A stretch of DNA of 64,000 nt, taken from Fonticula alba ATCC 38817. Lineage: Eukaryota > Protista > Nucleariida. The notes under the pieces are model-generated. The model was not told where the DNA came from. It did not search any database and saw only the letters and a program-made list of their open reading frames with translations. Where the stretch lies: assembly GCA_000388065.2 (NCBI GenBank), contig KB932201.1; one strand, given 5' to 3'. Below, piece by piece: positions 58,314-64,000 of the stretch. Position numbers and translations under genes: made by a program. Position 1 is the first letter of the stretch, and each line of letters opens with the position of its first letter.

Positions 58314-58581
58314 GCGCCCCCCCCCCCACCCAACCCCCCGCCCATACCGGGGATTGGTTTCCTCTGGCGCCGGGTGGAGACTGACCGGCCCAATGCACCC
58401 ATGGCCTTTTCCCATGTGTTTCTGGTGTGTCATTCCTCCACGAGACTTGGGCTGGAGGAGGCGTGCAGGCTGCTGAGAGGGAAGAGGGCGAGAGATGAGG
58501 AGACAGGTGCGGGGGGTGGGGGAGGAGGACGAACGAAAAAAAAAATGATGGTGGCATATGTTTATTTGCTACTCTCCTGGG

Positions 58582-58622
<41 letters not shown>

Positions 58623-58650
58623 AGACCACTGGAGGGATAATCCAGGTGGC

Positions 58651-61600
58651 TCACTTCTCGGATGGCTGAGGGCCAAAGCAAAGCGTGCCAGTCACGACCA
58701 ACTGGCCGTCGGCAGTGAAGCTCACCCCGGGGGCCTGCTCGACGGAGACCGGGATATTGGCCTGGGAAATGGGGAGTCGCGTAGTGGAGGAGGCACCGGC
58801 ACGGGCGGCGACCGCGACGGCACCCGCCACCACCGGCGCCTTGCTCGGGGCAAGGCCCATGGTGATGTGCGGCGCCCGGTTGCTGAAGGTCCAGCCAGCC
58901 TGCAGGGCATCTGGCAGGGCCACGCAGAAGGCCCCGGCCTGCTTGGGATCCAGGGCCAGGAGGTCCACGGTGAGCGCAACCTTGATGGGCGTGGTCGGGG
59001 CGCCAGCCGCCGCATGGAAGTCACGGATGGCCTGCAACATGCGACTCTCGGCAGTCGGCTTGGCCGGCGGGGTGTCTGTGTTTGTGACGAAGGGGGGGGG
59101 GGGAGGGGAGGGGGATCCCGGCAAGAGGGGGAGAGGAGCCAGAAACGCGAGGTGAGAAGTGATATTCAGGAGATGGGTGGAAAACTCGGGGGGGGAGGGG
59201 GGGGGCGTGTGTGCGCGTGCATGCGAAGGCGGACAACGAAGGCGGACAAACGTACACTTGTTTCCCAGGAAGACAAGCGTCACATGGAAGAGAGAGACAT
59301 CGCGCGGCGGCAGGCTGGAGAGAAGGTCCTTCGGCGTCATGTCGGAATACAGCTGATGCAGGAAGCGCGACACCCCCTTGTCCAGGAGAATCTGCAAGTA
59401 CAGCGGATGCCCGGGCTTGTGCCAGCCGATGGACTGCATGAACGGGTCCTCCGGGAGAGAGTCAGCGATCTTGGCATCGGCCAGCTGCTCGGCCAGACGA
59501 CCAAGCGCCTCGTCATCGGCCTGGGGAGGGCATGCGGCGGCAGCCGCCTGGGTGGCCGTCGCAATGAAAGCCGCCGTCAGCCCGGCCAGCGGGGCAAAGA
59601 CCATGTCCTTGGAAGAGGCGTCGACCCCGGGACGGTGCGCCAGCGGCTGGAGAGTCCGCAAAATGTGCCCCAGGACCTCGGCCACCGGAGCCCCATACGG
59701 GACCGGGAGGCACTCGTCAAAGAGGAGACCATCCTGCCCAAAGCGCCCAGTCGTCAGGGGAGTGCTCTCCGGGGAAAGGTCAAAGACCGAATGCCCCCCG
59801 ACCCCGGTGGCGGCCTGCACAGCGGCGAGAAGCCCAAGATCCGGACGCTCATACTCCTGGCCAAAGCGAGCCACCACGGCCCGGCGCTTGGCGAAGGGCA
59901 TGGCATCGAGCGAGGCATTCTCCTCGTTGCGACGCGTCACAAGGTTCTTCAGAGAGTGCTCCAGCAGGTCGGTCCCCTCGGCGAAGGCCCCGGCATCCGG
60001 CAAACGCCCGGGGGCCAGGAGAACAAGCAGCGCATCCGGGGCCACGCGCCGGACCAGCTGCACAACCGCCCCACGGTGAGCCAGGGTGTGGTTGTTCCGA
60101 TCGATGATCAGCACCTGCGGCTGAGCGGTCACCGGACGGCTGAGGGCCTCGGTCAGCCGGGCGAAGAAGCGCTCGCGCTTTCCATTGCACATGTCCTGAC
60201 TGATGCGCTCAACCTTCGGCGCGCCAGACAACCGAGGCAGGGTCTCGGCCAGCCAGTCGCCGATGGTGGACTTGCCGATGCCCGGGACACCCTGCATGAC
60301 CAGGACCAGGCGCCGGCCACGCGCCAGGCGCCCCTCGCGGGCGGTCTTCAACGCCTCGCCGAGGGCCGAGTGGAAGGCCGGCACATCCAATGCGGCAGCC
60401 GTCAGGGGCTCCGAAGCCAGCAGGTCCGCCACCGACACGGTCGGCTGCGACTCCAGCGTCTGCAGCTGGGCAAACACCTGGTTGGCCAGGTCCTCCGTGC
60501 GAGCAGCAGCCTTCATGGACCCAGTCGGCAGGGTGACCGACAGACGGGTCAGACGCGGGATGGCGGGCGACTTGGCAGCCAGCCCGGCCGCCTTGGCCGC
60601 CATGGCCAGGGCATCGGGCACCCCCTCGACAAGGGCGGTAAACTGCCCAGCCGGCAGGACAGCCTCCGACCGGTCAAAGGTGACGCGACAGGCAGCGCTC
60701 AGGGAATCGGCACGAGTGTTCGGATCCACCGTGGGAGACACAAGGAAGATGTGCCGCAGGGGGATGTCCTTAAGCGACCCCATGAGGGCCTTGAGGAAGG
60801 GCGCCAAATGCTGAGCATCCACCGGGGCCAGGACCGTGGGGTTGGTGAAGACACCGCCGGTGGCCCGGCGCGAGGTGCCGGTGGTGACCACCTTGCTGAC
60901 ATCGGCCGCCTGGAGGATGTGCCCCGGGGCCTTGTCCGTGGTCCGGGGAAGGACGACCGCATTGGCCGGGTTCAGGTGCAGCTTCCGGGCCAGATCCGCG
61001 GCAACATGCTCCGATAGCTTCTGCCCGGGCGTGGTAATCACCAGGAGGACCGTGGGGGTGGGGATCTGCGGGCCGATGGTGCTCTGCTCGCCGGGGGTCA
61101 GGCTGGAATTGATGTCGGTCATGTCATTGGCCCCGGTGGCACGGTAAAAGATGTTCCGCAGATCGACAATGCTGAGGGACTGCTGCAGGAGGGTGATGGA
61201 ATCCGAGCGCCGGGGGGAAGTTTGGGACAGAAGACGCCGAGTGGACAGCGAAAGGTAGGGCTCCGAACGGGCAATTTCCAGGATGGCCGCGTGGTTGTCG
61301 CGGATGTAGTCGAAGAAGGACCGAATCAGCGCCGGCTCCTTGGCCATGGTGGCCTTGTAGCGGCTGGCGATGCGCTCCGGCGGGTTCGGCTGGGCGAACC
61401 CCTGCTGCACCAGCGACCGCGCGCGCTTCCAAACATTGTAGTAGTTGGACTTGAGCTTGATCATGAAGCCGCTGCTGTCCTCCACCACCAGGCCCTCGGT
61501 CGGAAGCCCCACATGATATGTGGATGCCGAGCCATCGCCCATGGAGAAGGGCTCCAGCGAGTAGAGCAAATGCTCTCCGCGCCCGGGCAGGCCGGGATCA

Positions 61601-61946
61601 ACGCGTGCCCCGGGGCCCGGGGCCGGGCACCGGAAGAAGTAGTCATGATTCGCCTGGCGAGTGAAGGAGGCATAGGTATCCCAGTCGGGCAGAATGGCCA
61701 GAGGGGTCTTCAGCCGCAGGCCGAACTCCACGGCGAAGGCCCGGGTCTCCTCGAAAGGCAGGCGCAGCTCGGCACGGTCGGCCAGGTTGTTCCGGATCAG
61801 GTCCAGGAGGATGACATGCCCGACGTTGGTGTAGCCCGGCACATCGTAGTCGACGATGTGCGGATCGAGGACCGGATCGACAATCTCGAAAACTGCGCTG
61901 CACCCGAGCTCGTGGATGCGGCGAACATAGTCAACCTGATGAATGG

Positions 61947-61994
<48 letters not shown>

Positions 61995-63137
61995 GATGGG
62001 GGGGGGGAGAGAGAGAGATGCAGTCGTGTCAGAGGAACGGTGTCTTGGCGAAGGCCCGAGGGAGGACCATTGCGAAAGGGGGAGCGAGGGAATGGGGCGC
62101 ACCAGCGTCTTGCCCGCGGCGAGCAGGGTCTGGTGGAGGAGCTCGCGGAAGCGCCCAGCAAAGGGACCGGTGATGACGGACTTGCTGGTGGTTTCCAGGT
62201 AGATCTCATCATCAAGCACATGGGCAGGGGCCGGGACAACGCCGCGACCGGCGAAAAAGTCGCGCGCGGTGGCCCGATCAAGGTCGTCCAGCTCGCGGAG
62301 CTCGCGCGCCCCGTCGCCGGGGGAGAAGTGCGCCGGCAGGGGCCGGGTGGCGGATGCGCGCAAACGCGGGAACGACACACCAAAGTAGCCGTTGGACTTC
62401 TCGAGCACCGTGCACGGGAAGGTCAGACGCTGGCGAACCTGCTCGGTAGCCATGAAGGGGATGCCGCGCTCATTCTCATAGAAGAACTTGGCATACCCAC
62501 GCCCAGAGACGGCGACCGCGACATTCGACTGCCGGAAGGACGCCTTCAGGGCGCTCTGTGCCTTGGTCATGCGGGCCCGGCGCGAAGTGGAAACCACCTC
62601 CGCAGACGGGGCACCCTCATCCTGACCCTCATCGTCAGAGCCATCCAGCTCGGACCCGGACTCGGTGGCGGTGTCCGCGGCCTTGGCAGCCGAGGCCGGA
62701 GCCGGAGTCGGCGCCAGGCCCGGGCACACTTCCGGCAGCAGCTCCACGAAGAGACCACGAGCGCGCACACTGTCATCATCGTAACGCGAGCCGAAGAAGG
62801 CCTGCTCGGAGATGTTGGCACTGAAGAGCCCGCGCGGGAGCTGCTTGATGTTGACATCCGGATGCATCATGATCCGGCGCAGGGCCACCGAGTCGGGCTC
62901 CGTCTCGGAGTTGGGCGGGGCCTCCGACAAGAAGGAGCTCGGCGCATTGGACCGACGGACCCGGCGTCCGGCAGCGGGGGCCTGATTGACTTGAGTGTCG
63001 GCGGTGGCGGGAGAGGGGGCGCCAGCAGGGGGCTGGGCGACGGAGGATCCAGTGTCGGCGGCAGTGGCCTTGGCGCGGCCCTTGCCACGGCGCTTCTTAC
63101 CCTTGCTGGCGGCAGCCACGGTGGAGGTAGAAGTCAT
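58651..63137 (-). CDS. Trl1-like trifunctional RNA repair/tRNA ligase (1379 aa): Rnl1-type adenylyltransferase + degenerate kinase-like module + P-loop polynucleotide kinase + 2H cyclic phosphodiesterase; exons 63137-62103, 61935-59256, 59075-58651
   Basis: Ligase motifs RARGLF, GYAKFF, motif I EKSNG (Lys at 62397-62399), SKS, motif III SAVFEIVDPVLDPHIVDY, motif IV EGLVV and motif V MIKLK. Kinase GVPGIGKST...ISQD...IIDRNNH. Two HxT motifs, FHVTL and PHITM. Exon lengths 1035+2680+425 = 4140 nt stay in frame. Confidence 0.9.
61945..61993. repeat. (GAGCAG)n hexamer repeat inside ligase-gene intron 1
   Basis: About 7-8 tandem GAGCAG units within intron 61936-62102. Confidence 0.9.
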
Positions 63138-64000
63138 GTCGGTAGATGGAAAGCGAGGAGTGAGGCGTAGATGTTGGGGAAGGAGGAGGAGAACGACGGG
63201 CAGAGGCCAGGGAGAGTGATCAGCAGTCGCGCGTGGGCCCGTATGAGTGAGTGTGTGTGTGTATGTGTACGTGTGGGGAAACTCTGATTCGGCCGTTCTG
63301 CCGGCGGGATCCCCGGCAGGGTCGCACAAAATGCGTGGACAGCCGCGGGTAAACATTCTACTCCTTCCTGGGTCACAGCCCCCCTCCCCTCTCGCCACCC
63401 CGCGCAGACACACACCCGCACACGCACATGCGCGCGGGAAAGAGGCGCTGGCAGCCGGCCCCCTGGATTGTGTGTGGGGGGGAGGGGCGGGCGGAAGCCG
63501 CCTACCAGTGTGGCGGTCCACCAAAGGGAGCCCCCCCTTGCCGATGCGTGTTTGCCGGGGTCGACCTTTCATCCATCTCGCCAATCGGTGCGGGAAGAAC
63601 GGCACCTTGGAGACTGTCTTGCCAATGATCTCAGCAGCGGGGTTTCCCTTGCCCCGGTTGGTCGCCGCGGGCCTGGACCCGGCGTACAGGCCCCGGTGGA
63701 GGACCAAATGTTCCCAATCAGGCGCCGGCCGATTCGGGGACCCAAAATGCAGGGGCTCTATTGTGGACCAGGGCCCGGCGGGGCTGGGAGGCGAGGGCCT
63801 TGCGGTTGGAGAATGGAGCACCAAAACGAGGGGAACACCGCGGCTCCTCGGATCGAAATTACCTTCGAGTTGCGCAATTGAACACACGCCCCAGGCGTCC
63901 GATGAAGGTACTACTCGAGGCTAGCGCACAAGAGAAGGGGCTGTAAGTCCCTTCCCCCCCCCTGCCTTTCACCCTTGGTGGGGCCATCCAGCTGCACACC

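What the first reader, a model, noticed from the sequence alone, without database searches (positions are those of the whole stretch)
58651..63137. Chimeric Trl1-like RNA repair enzyme: bacterial/phage-type Rnl1 ligase fused to eukaryotic kinase + 2H phosphodiesterase
Seen: one spliced ORF (1379 aa) with ligase, P-loop kinase (GVPGIGKST, ISQD, IIDRNNH) and 2H CPD (FHVTL, PHITM), in the order of fungal/plant Trl1. Known: fungal Trl1 ligases read roughly K(A/E)NGCIIFIS, SKHS, TAVAE.CDDSFEEHIL.Y, EGFVIR, F.FK.KFEEPYLMYRQWRE. Here the motifs read LTFPC.VLEKSNGYFG, SKS...GPFAGRF, SAVFEIVDPVLDPHIVDY, VILLDLIRN and EGLVVEDSSGFMIKLKSNYYNVWKRAR. From memory these match the bacterial/phage Rnl1-like ligases (KENGFLG; SKS..G.FA..F; FE.IDP.NDPHI..Y; EG.V.ED..GFM.K.K..YY..WK), which normally sit in PNK/phosphatase RNA-repair modules. 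Inference: the ligase domain was swapped in, or descends from a separate prokaryotic/viral lineage. The RQWR motif linked to the 2'-phosphate requirement of fungal Trl1 is replaced by NVWK, so the enzyme may seal 2'-OH ends or repair broken RNAs generally. Host-type introns (GTGCGC and GTACGT donors) show the gene is genomic rather than contamination.
Basis: partly seen in the sequence, partly recalled or inferred. Interest (0 to 1): 0.85.

Follow-up and report, generated by a model that had tools for sequence, protein, structure and literature searches.

The report
Divergent Trl1 tRNA ligase in Fonticula
This is a real, spliced and transcribed Fonticula alba gene for a three-in-one RNA 'heal-and-seal' (Trl1-type tRNA) ligase; its ligase part looks more like phage and bacterial RNA-repair ligases than like fungal ones, but it keeps the fungal-type fold and 2'-phosphate-binding residues, so a domain swap is possible and not shown.

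Summary
The minus-strand gene (CDS 63137..58651, three exons) is Fonticula alba H696_00915, 1379 aa. One 4.3-kb transcript contig has both introns removed. The domain order is LIG, an unknown 230-aa module, KIN, then CPD.

The ligase is much closer to phage/bacterial kinase-phosphatase-ligase proteins (phrog_8238 E 1e-31, about 30% identity) than to fungal Trl1-LIG (21%, no pairwise hit). That phage/bacterial family is itself homologous to fungal Trl1-LIG over its full length, including the 'Rnl6' C-domain (profile E 1e-36). It matches T4 Rnl1 only at 1e-13, core only, so 'Rnl1-type' is the wrong label.

The F. alba LIG model superposes on Chaetomium Trl1-LIG at Z 24, C-domain included. The 'RQWR to NVWK' reading is a misalignment. 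The true counterpart is K515-R-A-R518, and with H371 the 2'-PO4 triad is kept. KIN-CPD is homologous to fungal Trl1 KIN-CPD (hhalign 98%, E 3e-14).

F. alba has a second paralog, and at least three uncultured eukaryotes carry the same gene type. Free trees nest this clade among the phage/bacterial sequences, but an AU test does not reject a single eukaryotic clade with fungi. The origin is unresolved. First-stage readers noted this same stretch twice (s1-065745).

The parts
58630..63236 (-). Transcript (5'UTR, CDS, 3'UTR) of Fonticula alba H696_00915
   Evidence: One 4.33-4.35 kb contig in each of 4 runs covers 58630-59075, 59256-61933 and 62101-63236 contiguously.
62103..63137 (-). CDS exon 1 (aa 1-345): basic N-terminus, then the N-terminal half of LIG
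   Evidence: ATG at 63137. The frame is open to 62103, followed by a GTGCGC donor. Matches P0001.
61936..62102 (-). Intron 1 (167 nt, phase 0, GTGCGC...CAG), containing a (CTCCTG)n repeat
   Evidence: Sequence read. Absent from the transcript contigs; the junction is placed within 2 nt of mine, an ambiguity caused by repeated letters.
59256..61935 (-). CDS exon 2 (aa 346-1238 plus 1 nt): C-terminal half of LIG, middle module, KIN, start of CPD
59076..59255 (-). Intron 2 (180 nt, GTACGT...CAG), lying inside the CPD domain
   Evidence: Joint 59075|59256 'skips 180, CT..AC' in all four runs. Sequence.
58651..59075 (-). CDS exon 3 (aa 1239-1379 plus TGA stop at 58653-58651)
61051..62885 (-). LIG domain (aa 85-640; spans intron 1). 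It comprises the N-subdomain, nucleotidyltransferase motifs I-V, three low-confidence insertions (about aa 145-179, 250-310, 457-486) and a helical C-domain
   Evidence: phrog_8238 E 1.2e-31. PF09511 E 3.8e-11. AF2 model pLDDT 80, pTM 0.82. VIA Z 24.3 to Chaetomium Trl1-LIG over model residues 1-539.
62397..62399 (-). Lys247, motif I (EKSNG), the predicted adenylylation site
   Evidence: Invariant column K163 of A2 = K247 of P0001. Codon aag read.
61858..61860 (-). His371, nine residues after the motif III Glu362; counterpart of Chaetomium LIG His227 (2'-PO4 triad)
   Evidence: Invariant in A2/A3. Aligned to the fungal EEH His. Role of the fungal residue is taken from PMC11404444.
61417..61428 (-). 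K515-R-A-R518 just after motif V (K505, K507); counterpart of fungal R334-Q-W-R337
   Evidence: Translates to KRAR. HMMER and MAFFT align it to fungal RQWR. R518 is invariant and K515 is at least 90% conserved in the family.
60361..61050 (-). Middle module (aa 641-870) of unknown function, conserved in the Fonticula-type clade and absent from fungal Trl1
   Evidence: Alignment A7 with the paralog, L128 and L001. No Pfam, PDB or hhalign match.
59671..60333 (-). KIN domain (about aa 880-1100): P-loop G894-T902 at 60265-60291, SQD, IIDRNNH
   Evidence: hhalign to fungal Trl1 KIN-CPD, prob 98.2%, E 3.2e-14. P-loop translation. The kinases of sister eukaryotes pass Pfam PF08303.
58654..59418 (-). 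CPD (2H phosphoesterase) domain (about aa 1185-1379; spans intron 2): H1229-V-T-L (59284-59286 = His) and H1308-I-T-M (58867-58869 = His)
   Evidence: Both HxTx motifs align with fungal FHVTL and AHITVG. Codons read.

Best explanation
The gene encodes an expressed, trifunctional Trl1-type RNA ligase.

Inferred mechanism, by homology:
- The C-terminal 2H domain (H1229xT, H1308xT) opens a 2',3'-cyclic phosphate to 3'-OH/2'-PO4.
- The P-loop kinase (G894-T902, DRNNH) phosphorylates the 5'-OH.
- The N-terminal ligase is adenylylated on Lys247 and seals the ends.
- The ligase has the Trl1 ('Rnl6') two-domain fold. It keeps the residues that enforce 2'-PO4 specificity in fungal ligase: His371, Lys515 in place of the first Arg, and Arg518. 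It most likely makes a 2'-PO4 junction that a Tpt1 enzyme then clears, as in fungal and plant tRNA and HAC1-type splicing.

What is unusual:
- The ligase has kept a sequence close to a large phage/bacterial family of ligases that sit in kinase-metallophosphatase-ligase proteins.
- It carries three insertions.
- An unknown 230-aa module sits between LIG and KIN.
- F. alba has two paralogs.

The phage-likeness is largely retained ancestral character, because the fungal ligase sits on a very long branch with its own insertions. Whether the ligase was inherited together with KIN-CPD or acquired separately is not resolved by the data.
For: Gene and transcript.

LIG:
- All nucleotidyltransferase motifs are intact, plus the N-subdomain (ARGLF, GY.KFF) and the C-domain end (I..LR).
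- The family profile hits fungal Trl1-LIG structures at E 2.6e-36 to 1.5e-30 over profile positions 25-326 of 342. T4 Rnl1 is hit only at 1e-13, positions 46-260.
- AF2 model: pLDDT 80. Foldseek best hits are Chaetomium Trl1-LIG (E 2.4e-10, TM 0.63) against T4 Rnl1 (3.6e-7, TM 0.49).
- VIA: Z 24.3 with 330 residues including chain residues 328-407 (C-domain). For T4 Rnl1, Z 21.8 with 238 residues, core only.
- Swiss-Prot best hits are S. pombe, S. cerevisiae and C. albicans Trl1.

Triad: with the roles of the fungal residues taken from PMC11404444.

KIN-CPD:
- hhalign to 30 fungal Trl1 KIN-CPD sequences, prob 98.2%, E 3.2e-14, 370 columns.
- Protein-language-model neighbours are fungal Trl1 KIN-CPD (0.94), CNPase and plant tRNA ligase.
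- The kinases of sister eukaryotes pass PF08303 (2e-12, 5e-7).

A member of the phage/bacterial ligase family lies next to a Tpt1 gene in a phage contig, so this ligase type can work in a 2'-PO4 pathway.

Origin: AU tests do not reject Fonticula-type plus fungal LIG as one clade (p 0.48; p 0.84 with the constrained tree 34.8 lnL better).
Against: - No biochemistry has been done.
- The first triad Arg is Lys.
- In F. alba itself the Pfam Trl1 kinase and CPD models are below threshold (13.7 and 13.4 bits).
- I could not search the genome for Tpt1, RtcB or intron-containing tRNAs. None lie in the window and no scan notes mention them.
- For the 'retained ancestral character' part: free ML trees place the clade inside the phage/bacterial family (83/91, 88/88; sister to one K-P-L protein at 95/92).
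- LIG identity to phage/bacterial sequences is 30%, against 21% to fungal ones.
- LIG is the slower-evolving domain both within fungi and between the two F. alba paralogs, yet it is no better conserved than KIN-CPD between F. alba and fungi.
- The AF2 model rests on an alignment made almost entirely of phage/bacterial sequences.
Confidence: 0.7

Rival explanations
1. True chimera. An ancestor of the Fonticula-type clade acquired a ligase from the phage/bacterial (or giant-virus) kinase-phosphatase-ligase pool. It fused this to, or used it to replace the ligase of, a resident Trl1-type KIN-CPD gene. The heal-and-seal enzyme would then have been assembled independently of fungal Trl1. Its function would still be Trl1-like.
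For: - phmmer of LIG against 1.84 billion representatives: after the paralog and two eukaryotic fragments, all of the top 150 are stand-alone ligases or K-P-L / P-L proteins, at E down to 1e-26. No Trl1 architecture appears.
- There is no pairwise hit to fungal LIG.
- Free ML trees nest the clade among phage/bacterial sequences.
- Identities are 30% to phage/bacterial sequences against 21% to fungal, and there is a domain-rate discordance.
- hhalign of LIG to fungal LIG is weaker (E 1e-5) than that of KIN-CPD (E 3e-14).
- An extra middle module between LIG and KIN, absent from fungal Trl1, fits a separate fusion event.
- Separate LIG and KIN-CPD genes exist in Mucorales and amphioxus, so fission and fusion do occur (PMC10946426).
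- F. alba eats bacteria (my own knowledge).
Against: - AU tests do not reject a single eukaryotic LIG clade, and the constrained tree was even better in one data set.
- Without T4 the backbone supports are 22-68% and the fungal attachment point is arbitrary.
- The domain order is the same as in Trl1.
- The shared 'phage-like' states are also shared with T4 Rnl1, so they are ancestral.
- The fungal stem is 2.5-3.7 substitutions per site, which invites long-branch artefacts.
Confidence: 0.35
2. The ligase does not need a 2'-PO4 and works as a general RNA-repair ligase on 3'-OH/2'-OH ends.
For: - Its nearest relatives sit next to metallophosphoesterases, which in the Clostridium thermocellum Pnkp paradigm yield 2'-OH/3'-OH ends (PMC1920235).
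- The first triad Arg is Lys.
- The family-wide conservation of the triad in proteins paired with phosphatases shows that the triad alone need not mean 2'-PO4 dependence.
Against: - The NVWK argument rests on a misalignment. His371 and Arg518 are conserved, and in yeast the second Arg is the essential one while alanine at the first is tolerated (PMC11404444).
- The protein carries a 2H CPD, which produces 2'-PO4 ends, and no phosphatase that would remove them.
- A phage member of the family is adjacent to Tpt1.
Confidence: 0.12
3. Annotation or assembly artefact: ligase and kinase-CPD are separate genes or transcripts, or the ligase part is bacterial or phage contamination.
For: None was found. 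The only weak point is that the runs are labelled 'RNA?' (guessed by the tool) and are Logan contigs rather than raw reads.
Against: - One contig per run covers the whole CDS with both GT-AG introns precisely removed; one intron lies inside LIG and one inside CPD.
- GC content is uniform at 63-69%.
- A second paralog in the same genome has the same architecture.
- Three other intron-bearing eukaryotic contigs show the same gene order.
Confidence: 0.02

Closest known systems
Fungal tRNA ligase Trl1 (S. cerevisiae, C. albicans, Chaetomium thermophilum; LIG = founder of the 'Rnl6' clade)
   Same: - LIG-KIN-CPD order in one polypeptide.
- All ligase motifs, the N-subdomain and the helical C-domain (Z 24, 330 residues aligned).
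- His/basic/Arg triad at the same positions relative to motifs III and V.
- KIN (P-loop, DRNNH) and CPD (two HxT motifs) are homologous at hhalign 98%.
   Different: - Only about 21% identity; no pairwise HMMER hit.
- Lacks the fungal insertions at motif Ia and between motifs IV and V, and has three insertions of its own.
- Lys replaces the first Arg of the triad.
- P-loop is GVPGIGKST rather than the fungal GCGKTT, so GTP specificity is doubtful.
- An extra 230-aa module lies between LIG and KIN.
- Two paralogs are present.
Phage/bacterial kinase-metallophosphatase-ligase proteins (PHROG 8238; e.g. 'RNA ligase' of Staphylococcus phage Twort and other Staphylococcus phages, Alicyclobacillus phage KKP_3916) and their stand-alone about 320-aa ligase relatives
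   Same: - Ligase domain is 30-36% identical, with the same motif wording (KxNGF/YLG, SKS..G.FA, FE..DP..DPHI..Y, EG.V.ED..GFM.K.K..YY..WK..R).
- Same C-domain and the same His/Lys/Arg triad.
   Different: - There the ligase is C-terminal, behind a T4-Pnk-like kinase and a calcineurin-like phosphoesterase (86 of 162 proteins K-P-L, 18 P-L, 56 ligase alone).
- They have no 2H domain, no introns, and no Trl1-type kinase.
T4 RNA ligase 1 (Rnl1 family)
   Same: The adenylyltransferase domain including the N-subdomain (Z 21.8, 238 residues).
   Different: - The Rnl1-specific C-domain does not align.
- The profile match is core-only at E 1e-13.
- T4 Rnl1 lacks the His and the Arg of the triad.
Plant tRNA ligase (Arabidopsis RNL)
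   Same: Trifunctional LIG-KIN-CPD architecture and a requirement for 2'-PO4 (PMC6379707, PMC10946426). Its KIN-CPD is among the nearest language-model neighbours.
   Different: Its ligase domain is structurally remote from the F. alba model (Foldseek E 0.79).
Split systems: Mucorales RNL and Branchiostoma RNL plus PNK/CPDase
   Same: Trl1-type chemistry; the ligase is Trl1-LIG-like with the RxxR motif (PMC10946426).
   Different: There the ligase and the healing enzymes are separate genes; here they are fused. Relevant only as precedent for fission and fusion.

Membership tests
Trl1-type trifunctional tRNA ligase | N-terminal ligase, central polynucleotide kinase and C-terminal 2H cyclic phosphodiesterase in one polypeptide | tested here: met
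   Domain order from P0001. One spliced transcript. hhalign of KIN-CPD to fungal Trl1.
Trl1-type trifunctional tRNA ligase | [quoted passage not shown] | tested here: met
   K247 (KxNG), SKS, E362, EG 492-493, K505/K507, ARGLF, GY.KFF.
Rnl6 clade (Trl1-LIG) | Distinctive all-helical C-terminal domain appended to the adenylyltransferase domain | tested here: met
   The profile aligns through the C-domain of 6n0v/6n67/9qw7. VIA Z 24.3, model 1-539 against chain 44-407. Caveat: this is a predicted model built from a family alignment.
Rnl6 clade (Trl1-LIG) | Triad His (9 aa after the motif III Glu) and second Arg (R337 in Chaetomium) that bind the 2'-PO4 mimic | tested here: met
   H371 and R518 are aligned and invariant.
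Rnl6 clade (Trl1-LIG) | First Arg of the triad (R334 in Chaetomium) | tested here: not met
   The position is Lys515, a conservative change. It is Lys in at least 90% of the phage/bacterial family. Yeast tolerates Ala at this position (PMC11404444).
Trl1-type trifunctional tRNA ligase | Trl1-family kinase (Pfam PF08303) | tested here: inconclusive
   F. alba scores 13.7 bits against a cut-off of 22.7. However, hhalign gives 98% to fungal KIN-CPD, and the sister eukaryotes L128 and L003 pass at 48 and 30.4 bits.
Trl1-type trifunctional tRNA ligase | 2H phosphoesterase with two HxT/S motifs (Pfam PF08302) | tested here: inconclusive
   Both motifs are present and align with the fungal ones. Pfam score is 13.4 bits against a cut-off of 23.
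Trl1-type trifunctional tRNA ligase | 2'-PO4-dependent sealing, complementation of yeast trl1-delta, and a partner Tpt1 | not testable with these tools
The rest of the genome could not be searched, and the scan notes have no RtcB or Tpt1 entries.
Rnl1 family (T4 RNA ligase 1) | The T4 Rnl1-specific C-terminal tRNA-recognition domain | tested here: not met
   The alignment to 2c5u/5tt6/9do4 stops at model residue 432 and chain residue 251. The profile match covers positions 46-260 only.
Phage/bacterial Pnkp-ligase fusion (PHROG 8238) | N-terminal P-loop kinase plus calcineurin-like phosphoesterase preceding the ligase | tested here: not met
   P0001 has no Metallophos hit, and the ligase is N-terminal. 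Only the ligase part of phrog_8238 matches (profile positions 526-686).

The most novel reading that the evidence does not exclude
The ligase domain of the Fonticula-type enzymes was captured from a phage, giant-virus or bacterial kinase-phosphatase-ligase repair gene and joined to a Trl1-type KIN-CPD. The eukaryotic heal-and-seal tRNA ligase would then have been assembled at least twice from different ligase sources. More broadly, the 'fungal-specific' Rnl6 ligase fold, with its 2'-PO4 triad, would be a phage/bacterial invention.
Probability: 0.35. Interest if true: 0.7.

Novelty: new variant of a known kind. Interest (0 to 1): 0.5.

Why it matters
Trl1 is being pursued as an antifungal target on the premise that its ligase (Rnl6) is a fungus-specific invention with a unique C-domain (PMC6379707, PMC11404444). 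Three points follow from this locus.

- A close relative of Fungi carries a Trl1 whose ligase is 30% identical to ligases of Staphylococcus-phage-type repair proteins, yet folds like Trl1-LIG.
- That large phage/bacterial family shares the C-domain and the His/basic/Arg triad.
- This gives a concrete bridge for asking where the eukaryotic 5'-phosphate tRNA ligase came from, and what the triad really does in enzymes paired with a phosphatase rather than a 2H CPD.

The finding does not overturn the known mechanism. It is a divergent member of a known family, not a new system.

Tried and rejected
- Single-sequence AF2 of LIG gave pLDDT 37 and was unusable.
- phmmer of the exon pieces, and of the spliced LIG, against PDB found nothing.
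- Word-indexed homology search was nearly blind for this GC-rich, low-complexity protein (3 hits).
- The same search with an alignment led by P0001 returned only 4 hits and no fungal Trl1. Fungal Trl1 sequences were obtained instead by scanning metagenome contigs for the back-translated motif PYLMYRQWRE.
- A profile of the two F. alba KIN-CPD regions against PDB gave only marginal CNPase and P-loop hits.
- The idea that the middle module (aa 641-870) is a dead kinase copy, raised in notes s1-066876 and s1-066879, gained no support. There was no Pfam hit, hhalign against fungal KIN-CPD gave prob 0.1%, and there was no PDB hit.
Only its first run was read.
- Contamination and two-transcript readings were rejected.
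- No tRNA genes lie in the window.
- No papers link Fonticula with Trl1 or RtcB.
- Plant and kinetoplastid Trl1 sequences could not be obtained by reference, so they are missing from the trees.

Full report
**1. What is there.**
- The region is 63-69% G+C and holds a minus-strand gene.
- Reading the sequence gives: ATG at 63137; exon 1 to 62103; a 167-nt phase-0 intron (GTGCGC...CAG, 62102-61936); exon 2 61935-59256; a 180-nt intron (GTACGT...CAG, 59255-59076); and exon 3 to the TGA at 58653-58651.
- The spliced product is identical to the annotated 1379-aa hypothetical protein H696_00915 of Fonticula alba (P0001).
- Logan contigs from four public runs (two samples, one study; the tool guesses them to be RNA) each contain one 4.33-4.35 kb contig covering 58630-63236 with both introns precisely removed.
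- The gene is therefore genomic, spliced, and transcribed as a single LIG-KIN-CPD message.

**2. Domain content.**
- Pfam sees only RNA_lig_T4_1 above threshold (E 3.8e-11). The Trl1 kinase and CPD models, and AAA_33, score below threshold.
- The motifs are all present: K247 (EKSNG), SKS, E362, EG492-493, K505/K507, P-loop GVPGIGKST (894-902), SQD, IIDRNNH, FH1229VTL and PH1308ITM.
- F. alba has a second, intact paralog, H696_05354 (P0004, 1322 aa). It has the same order and is 40% (LIG) and 30% (KIN-CPD) identical by BLASTP.

**3.
- PHROG 8238, a 737-position kinase-phosphatase-ligase family, matches at E 1.2e-31. The T4 Rnl1 PHROG matches only at 1.4e-3.
- An exhaustive phmmer of aa 85-640 against 1.84 billion representatives found 656 proteins at E below 1e-3. 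After the paralog come two fragments (P0005, P0006), then stand-alone ligases of about 320 aa and proteins of about 720-790 aa.
- Of 162 proteins collected, 86 are kinase-metallophosphatase-ligase, 18 phosphatase-ligase and 56 ligase only.
- Annotated examples sit in Staphylococcus phage Twort and other Staphylococcus phages, and in Alicyclobacillus, Fusobacterium and Lactobacillus phages.
- The spliced F. alba LIG gives no phmmer hit at all to fungal Trl1-LIG chains in the PDB.

**4. That family is Trl1-like, not T4-Rnl1-like.**
- A profile of 144 family members (A2) hits the solved fungal Trl1 ligase domains (9qw7, 6n67, 6n0v, 9r3w, 6n0t) at E 2.6e-36 to 1.5e-30. The match covers profile positions 25-326 of 342, so it includes the C-terminal domain. 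T4 Rnl1 is hit at 1e-13 over positions 46-260 only.
- With that alignment AlphaFold gives a usable model of the F. alba LIG (pLDDT 80, pTM 0.82). The low-confidence parts are the three insertions.
- Foldseek ranks Chaetomium Trl1-LIG first (E 2.4e-10, TM 0.63), ahead of T4 Rnl1 (3.6e-7, TM 0.49).
- VIA-align gives Z 24.3, rmsd 3.1 A and 330 residues for model 1-539 against chain 44-407, so the C-domain is included. For T4 Rnl1 it gives Z 21.8 with 238 residues, ending at chain residue 251.
- Among Swiss-Prot models the best three are S. pombe, S. cerevisiae and C. albicans Trl1. Arabidopsis RNL is remote (E 0.79).
- The literature defines Rnl6 by this C-domain and regards it as unique to fungal (and possibly kinetoplastid) Trl1 (PMC6379707). 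By that criterion, F. alba LIG and the phage/bacterial family belong with Rnl6, not Rnl1.

**5. The 2'-phosphate argument.**
- In fungal LIG, a His nine residues after the motif III Glu, plus R334 and R337 just after motif V, bind the presumed 2'-PO4 and are needed for step 2 (PMC11404444).
HMMER and an independent MAFFT alignment instead align fungal Y-R-Q-W-R-E with W-K-R-A-R-S, with a one-residue gap after motif V.
- The counterparts are therefore K515 and R518, and the His is H371 (FEIVDPVLDPH).
- H and the second R are invariant, and K is at least 90% conserved, across the family. T4 Rnl1, which seals 2'-OH ends, has neither the His nor the Arg.
- In yeast the second Arg is essential, even to Lys, while Ala at the first is viable.
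- The sequence gives no reason to expect loss of 2'-PO4 recognition, and the protein's own 2H CPD would produce 2'-PO4 ends.
- One family member, P0109, lies in a T4-like phage contig. It carries an insert with HITW/HVTL motifs and a C-terminal kinase, and is followed directly by a PF01885 (Tpt1/KptA) gene. This ligase type does occur in a 2'-PO4 pathway.

**6. KIN-CPD is Trl1-type.**
- I recovered 120 fungal Trl1 loci by scanning metagenome contigs for the back-translated motif PYLMYRQWRE.
- A profile of the two F. alba KIN-CPD regions aligns to 30 fungal KIN-CPD regions with probability 98.2%, E 3.2e-14, over 370 columns. The alignment spans the P-loop, DRNNH and both HxT motifs.
- Language-model neighbours are fungal Trl1 KIN-CPD (0.94), CNPase and plant tRNA ligase.

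**7. It is not a Fonticula oddity.**
- P0006/L003 is a 68% G+C contig with short introns and an SF3B6 gene next door.
- P0152/L128 is 56% G+C, with intron-split FGGY, MBOAT, GH47 and LIM genes around it.
- P0005/L001 is the third contig.
- All three encode the same kind of ligase followed by the same middle module. Where the contig continues, a kinase follows that passes Pfam's Trl1 kinase threshold (48 and 30.4 bits), and in L003 two HVTL motifs follow as well.
- These sequences form a 100/98-supported clade with the two F. alba paralogs.

**8. Chimera or not.**
- ML trees were built under LG+C20+F+G4 PMSF on 325-328 columns, with 12 fungal LIGs, 41-53 phage/bacterial LIGs and T4 Rnl1.
- The fungal clade sits on a stem of 2.5-2.6 substitutions per site, next to the T4 outgroup. 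The Fonticula-type clade sits inside a poorly resolved phage/bacterial group: 83/91 and 88/88 for the separating branch, and sister to one K-P-L protein at 95/92.
- The tool itself flags the fungal-T4 join as a possible long-branch artefact.
- AU tests do not reject Fonticula-type plus fungal as one clade. In the first data set, delta lnL is 2.0 and p is 0.48. In the second, the constrained tree was 34.8 lnL better than the tree the free search found, with p 0.84.
- Without T4, the fungal stem (3.7) attaches beside single phage/bacterial sequences with 39-44% support, and all backbone nodes are at 22-68%.
- Pairwise identities on the trimmed columns are: Fonticula-phage/bacterial 30%, Fonticula-fungal 21%, fungal-phage/bacterial 23%, phage/bacterial among themselves 36%, and T4 against everything 18-21%.
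- The fungal ligase is thus roughly equidistant from everything, and its insertions at motif Ia and between motifs IV and V are absent from Fonticula-type, phage/bacterial and T4 sequences. Much of the 'phage-like' look is therefore shared ancestral state.
- In favour of a separate origin: LIG evolves more slowly than KIN-CPD both within fungi (57% against 45%) and between the F. alba paralogs (56% against 34%), yet it is no better conserved between F. alba and fungi (21% against 21%). In addition, the LIG-fungal hhalign (E 1e-5) is weaker than the KIN-CPD one, and there is an extra middle module.
- I put vertical descent with a fast fungal stem somewhat ahead of domain capture (about 0.35). 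The data do not decide between them.

**9. Verdict.**
- The functional call (Trl1-type heal-and-seal ligase) is well supported by homology.
- The 'Rnl1' label and the 2'-OH inference are wrong.
- The chimera claim is open.
- This is a new variant of a known enzyme family. Its real interest lies in the origin of Trl1 and in the reach of the Rnl6 fold into phages, not in any new mechanism.
- No published description was found.

Noticed in passing
L002:6001-9035 (ENA ERZ28616670 scaffold_1892; proteins P0109 and the next gene): A T4-like phage contig (Gp23 capsid, prohead protease, terminase) encodes a 786-aa protein. It has a Trl1-like ligase interrupted by a roughly 165-aa insert carrying HITW and HVTL (2H-like) motifs, plus a C-terminal P-loop kinase. 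It is followed immediately by a PF01885 (Tpt1/KptA RNA 2'-phosphotransferase) gene. This looks like a complete phage-encoded 2'-PO4 heal-and-seal pathway. The 2H assignment of the insert rests on the motifs only.
   Followed up: partly
Alignment A2 (144 phage/bacterial ligase domains); The large phage/bacterial ligase family, found in kinase-metallophosphatase-ligase proteins of Staphylococcus Twort-type and other phages and of bacteria, is homologous to fungal Trl1-LIG. The homology covers the C-domain that defines 'Rnl6' and conserves the His/Lys/Arg counterpart of the 2'-PO4 triad. The literature treats that domain as unique to Trl1.
   Followed up: partly
window 60361-61050 (-), aa 641-870: A 230-aa module between LIG and KIN begins with a P-loop-like but lysine-less stretch (VITTPGQK; VVTGPPFAGQD in relatives). 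It is conserved in the paralog and in L128 and L001, and absent from fungal Trl1. It has no Pfam, PDB or profile-profile match, including to the Trl1 kinase.
   Followed up: partly
Elsewhere in the F. alba genome (P0004 = H696_05354, contig of 619 kb): A second full-length LIG-middle-KIN-CPD paralog (1322 aa) has all catalytic motifs intact, except DRNNQ in place of DRNNH in the kinase. The duplication postdates the split from the uncultured relatives.
   Followed up: partly
L003 (JGI 3300017648), L128-L131 (ENA ERZ27248749 and three other ERZ2724xxxx assemblies), L001 (Logan SRR31152999): Uncultured eukaryotes carry the same Fonticula-type Trl1, with short introns and neighbours SF3B6, GH47 mannosidase and LIM. 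Their identity is unknown. L003-type and L128-type contigs occur in ENA assemblies with closely similar accession numbers (ERZ2725xxxx and ERZ2724xxxx), possibly one metagenome project.
   Followed up: partly
window 58576-58629 and 61940-62023: A (GA)n microsatellite lies just beyond the 3' end of the transcript contig (58630), and a (CTCCTG)n hexamer repeat fills much of intron 1. The read-laying tool skipped both as repeats.
   Followed up: no
(protein atlas neighbours of the LIG part): The nearest named clusters by language-model features include a 477-aa RNA-ligase cluster that is mostly from Nucleocytoviricota (giant viruses). This is a possible vector between phage-type ligases and protists.
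   Followed up: no
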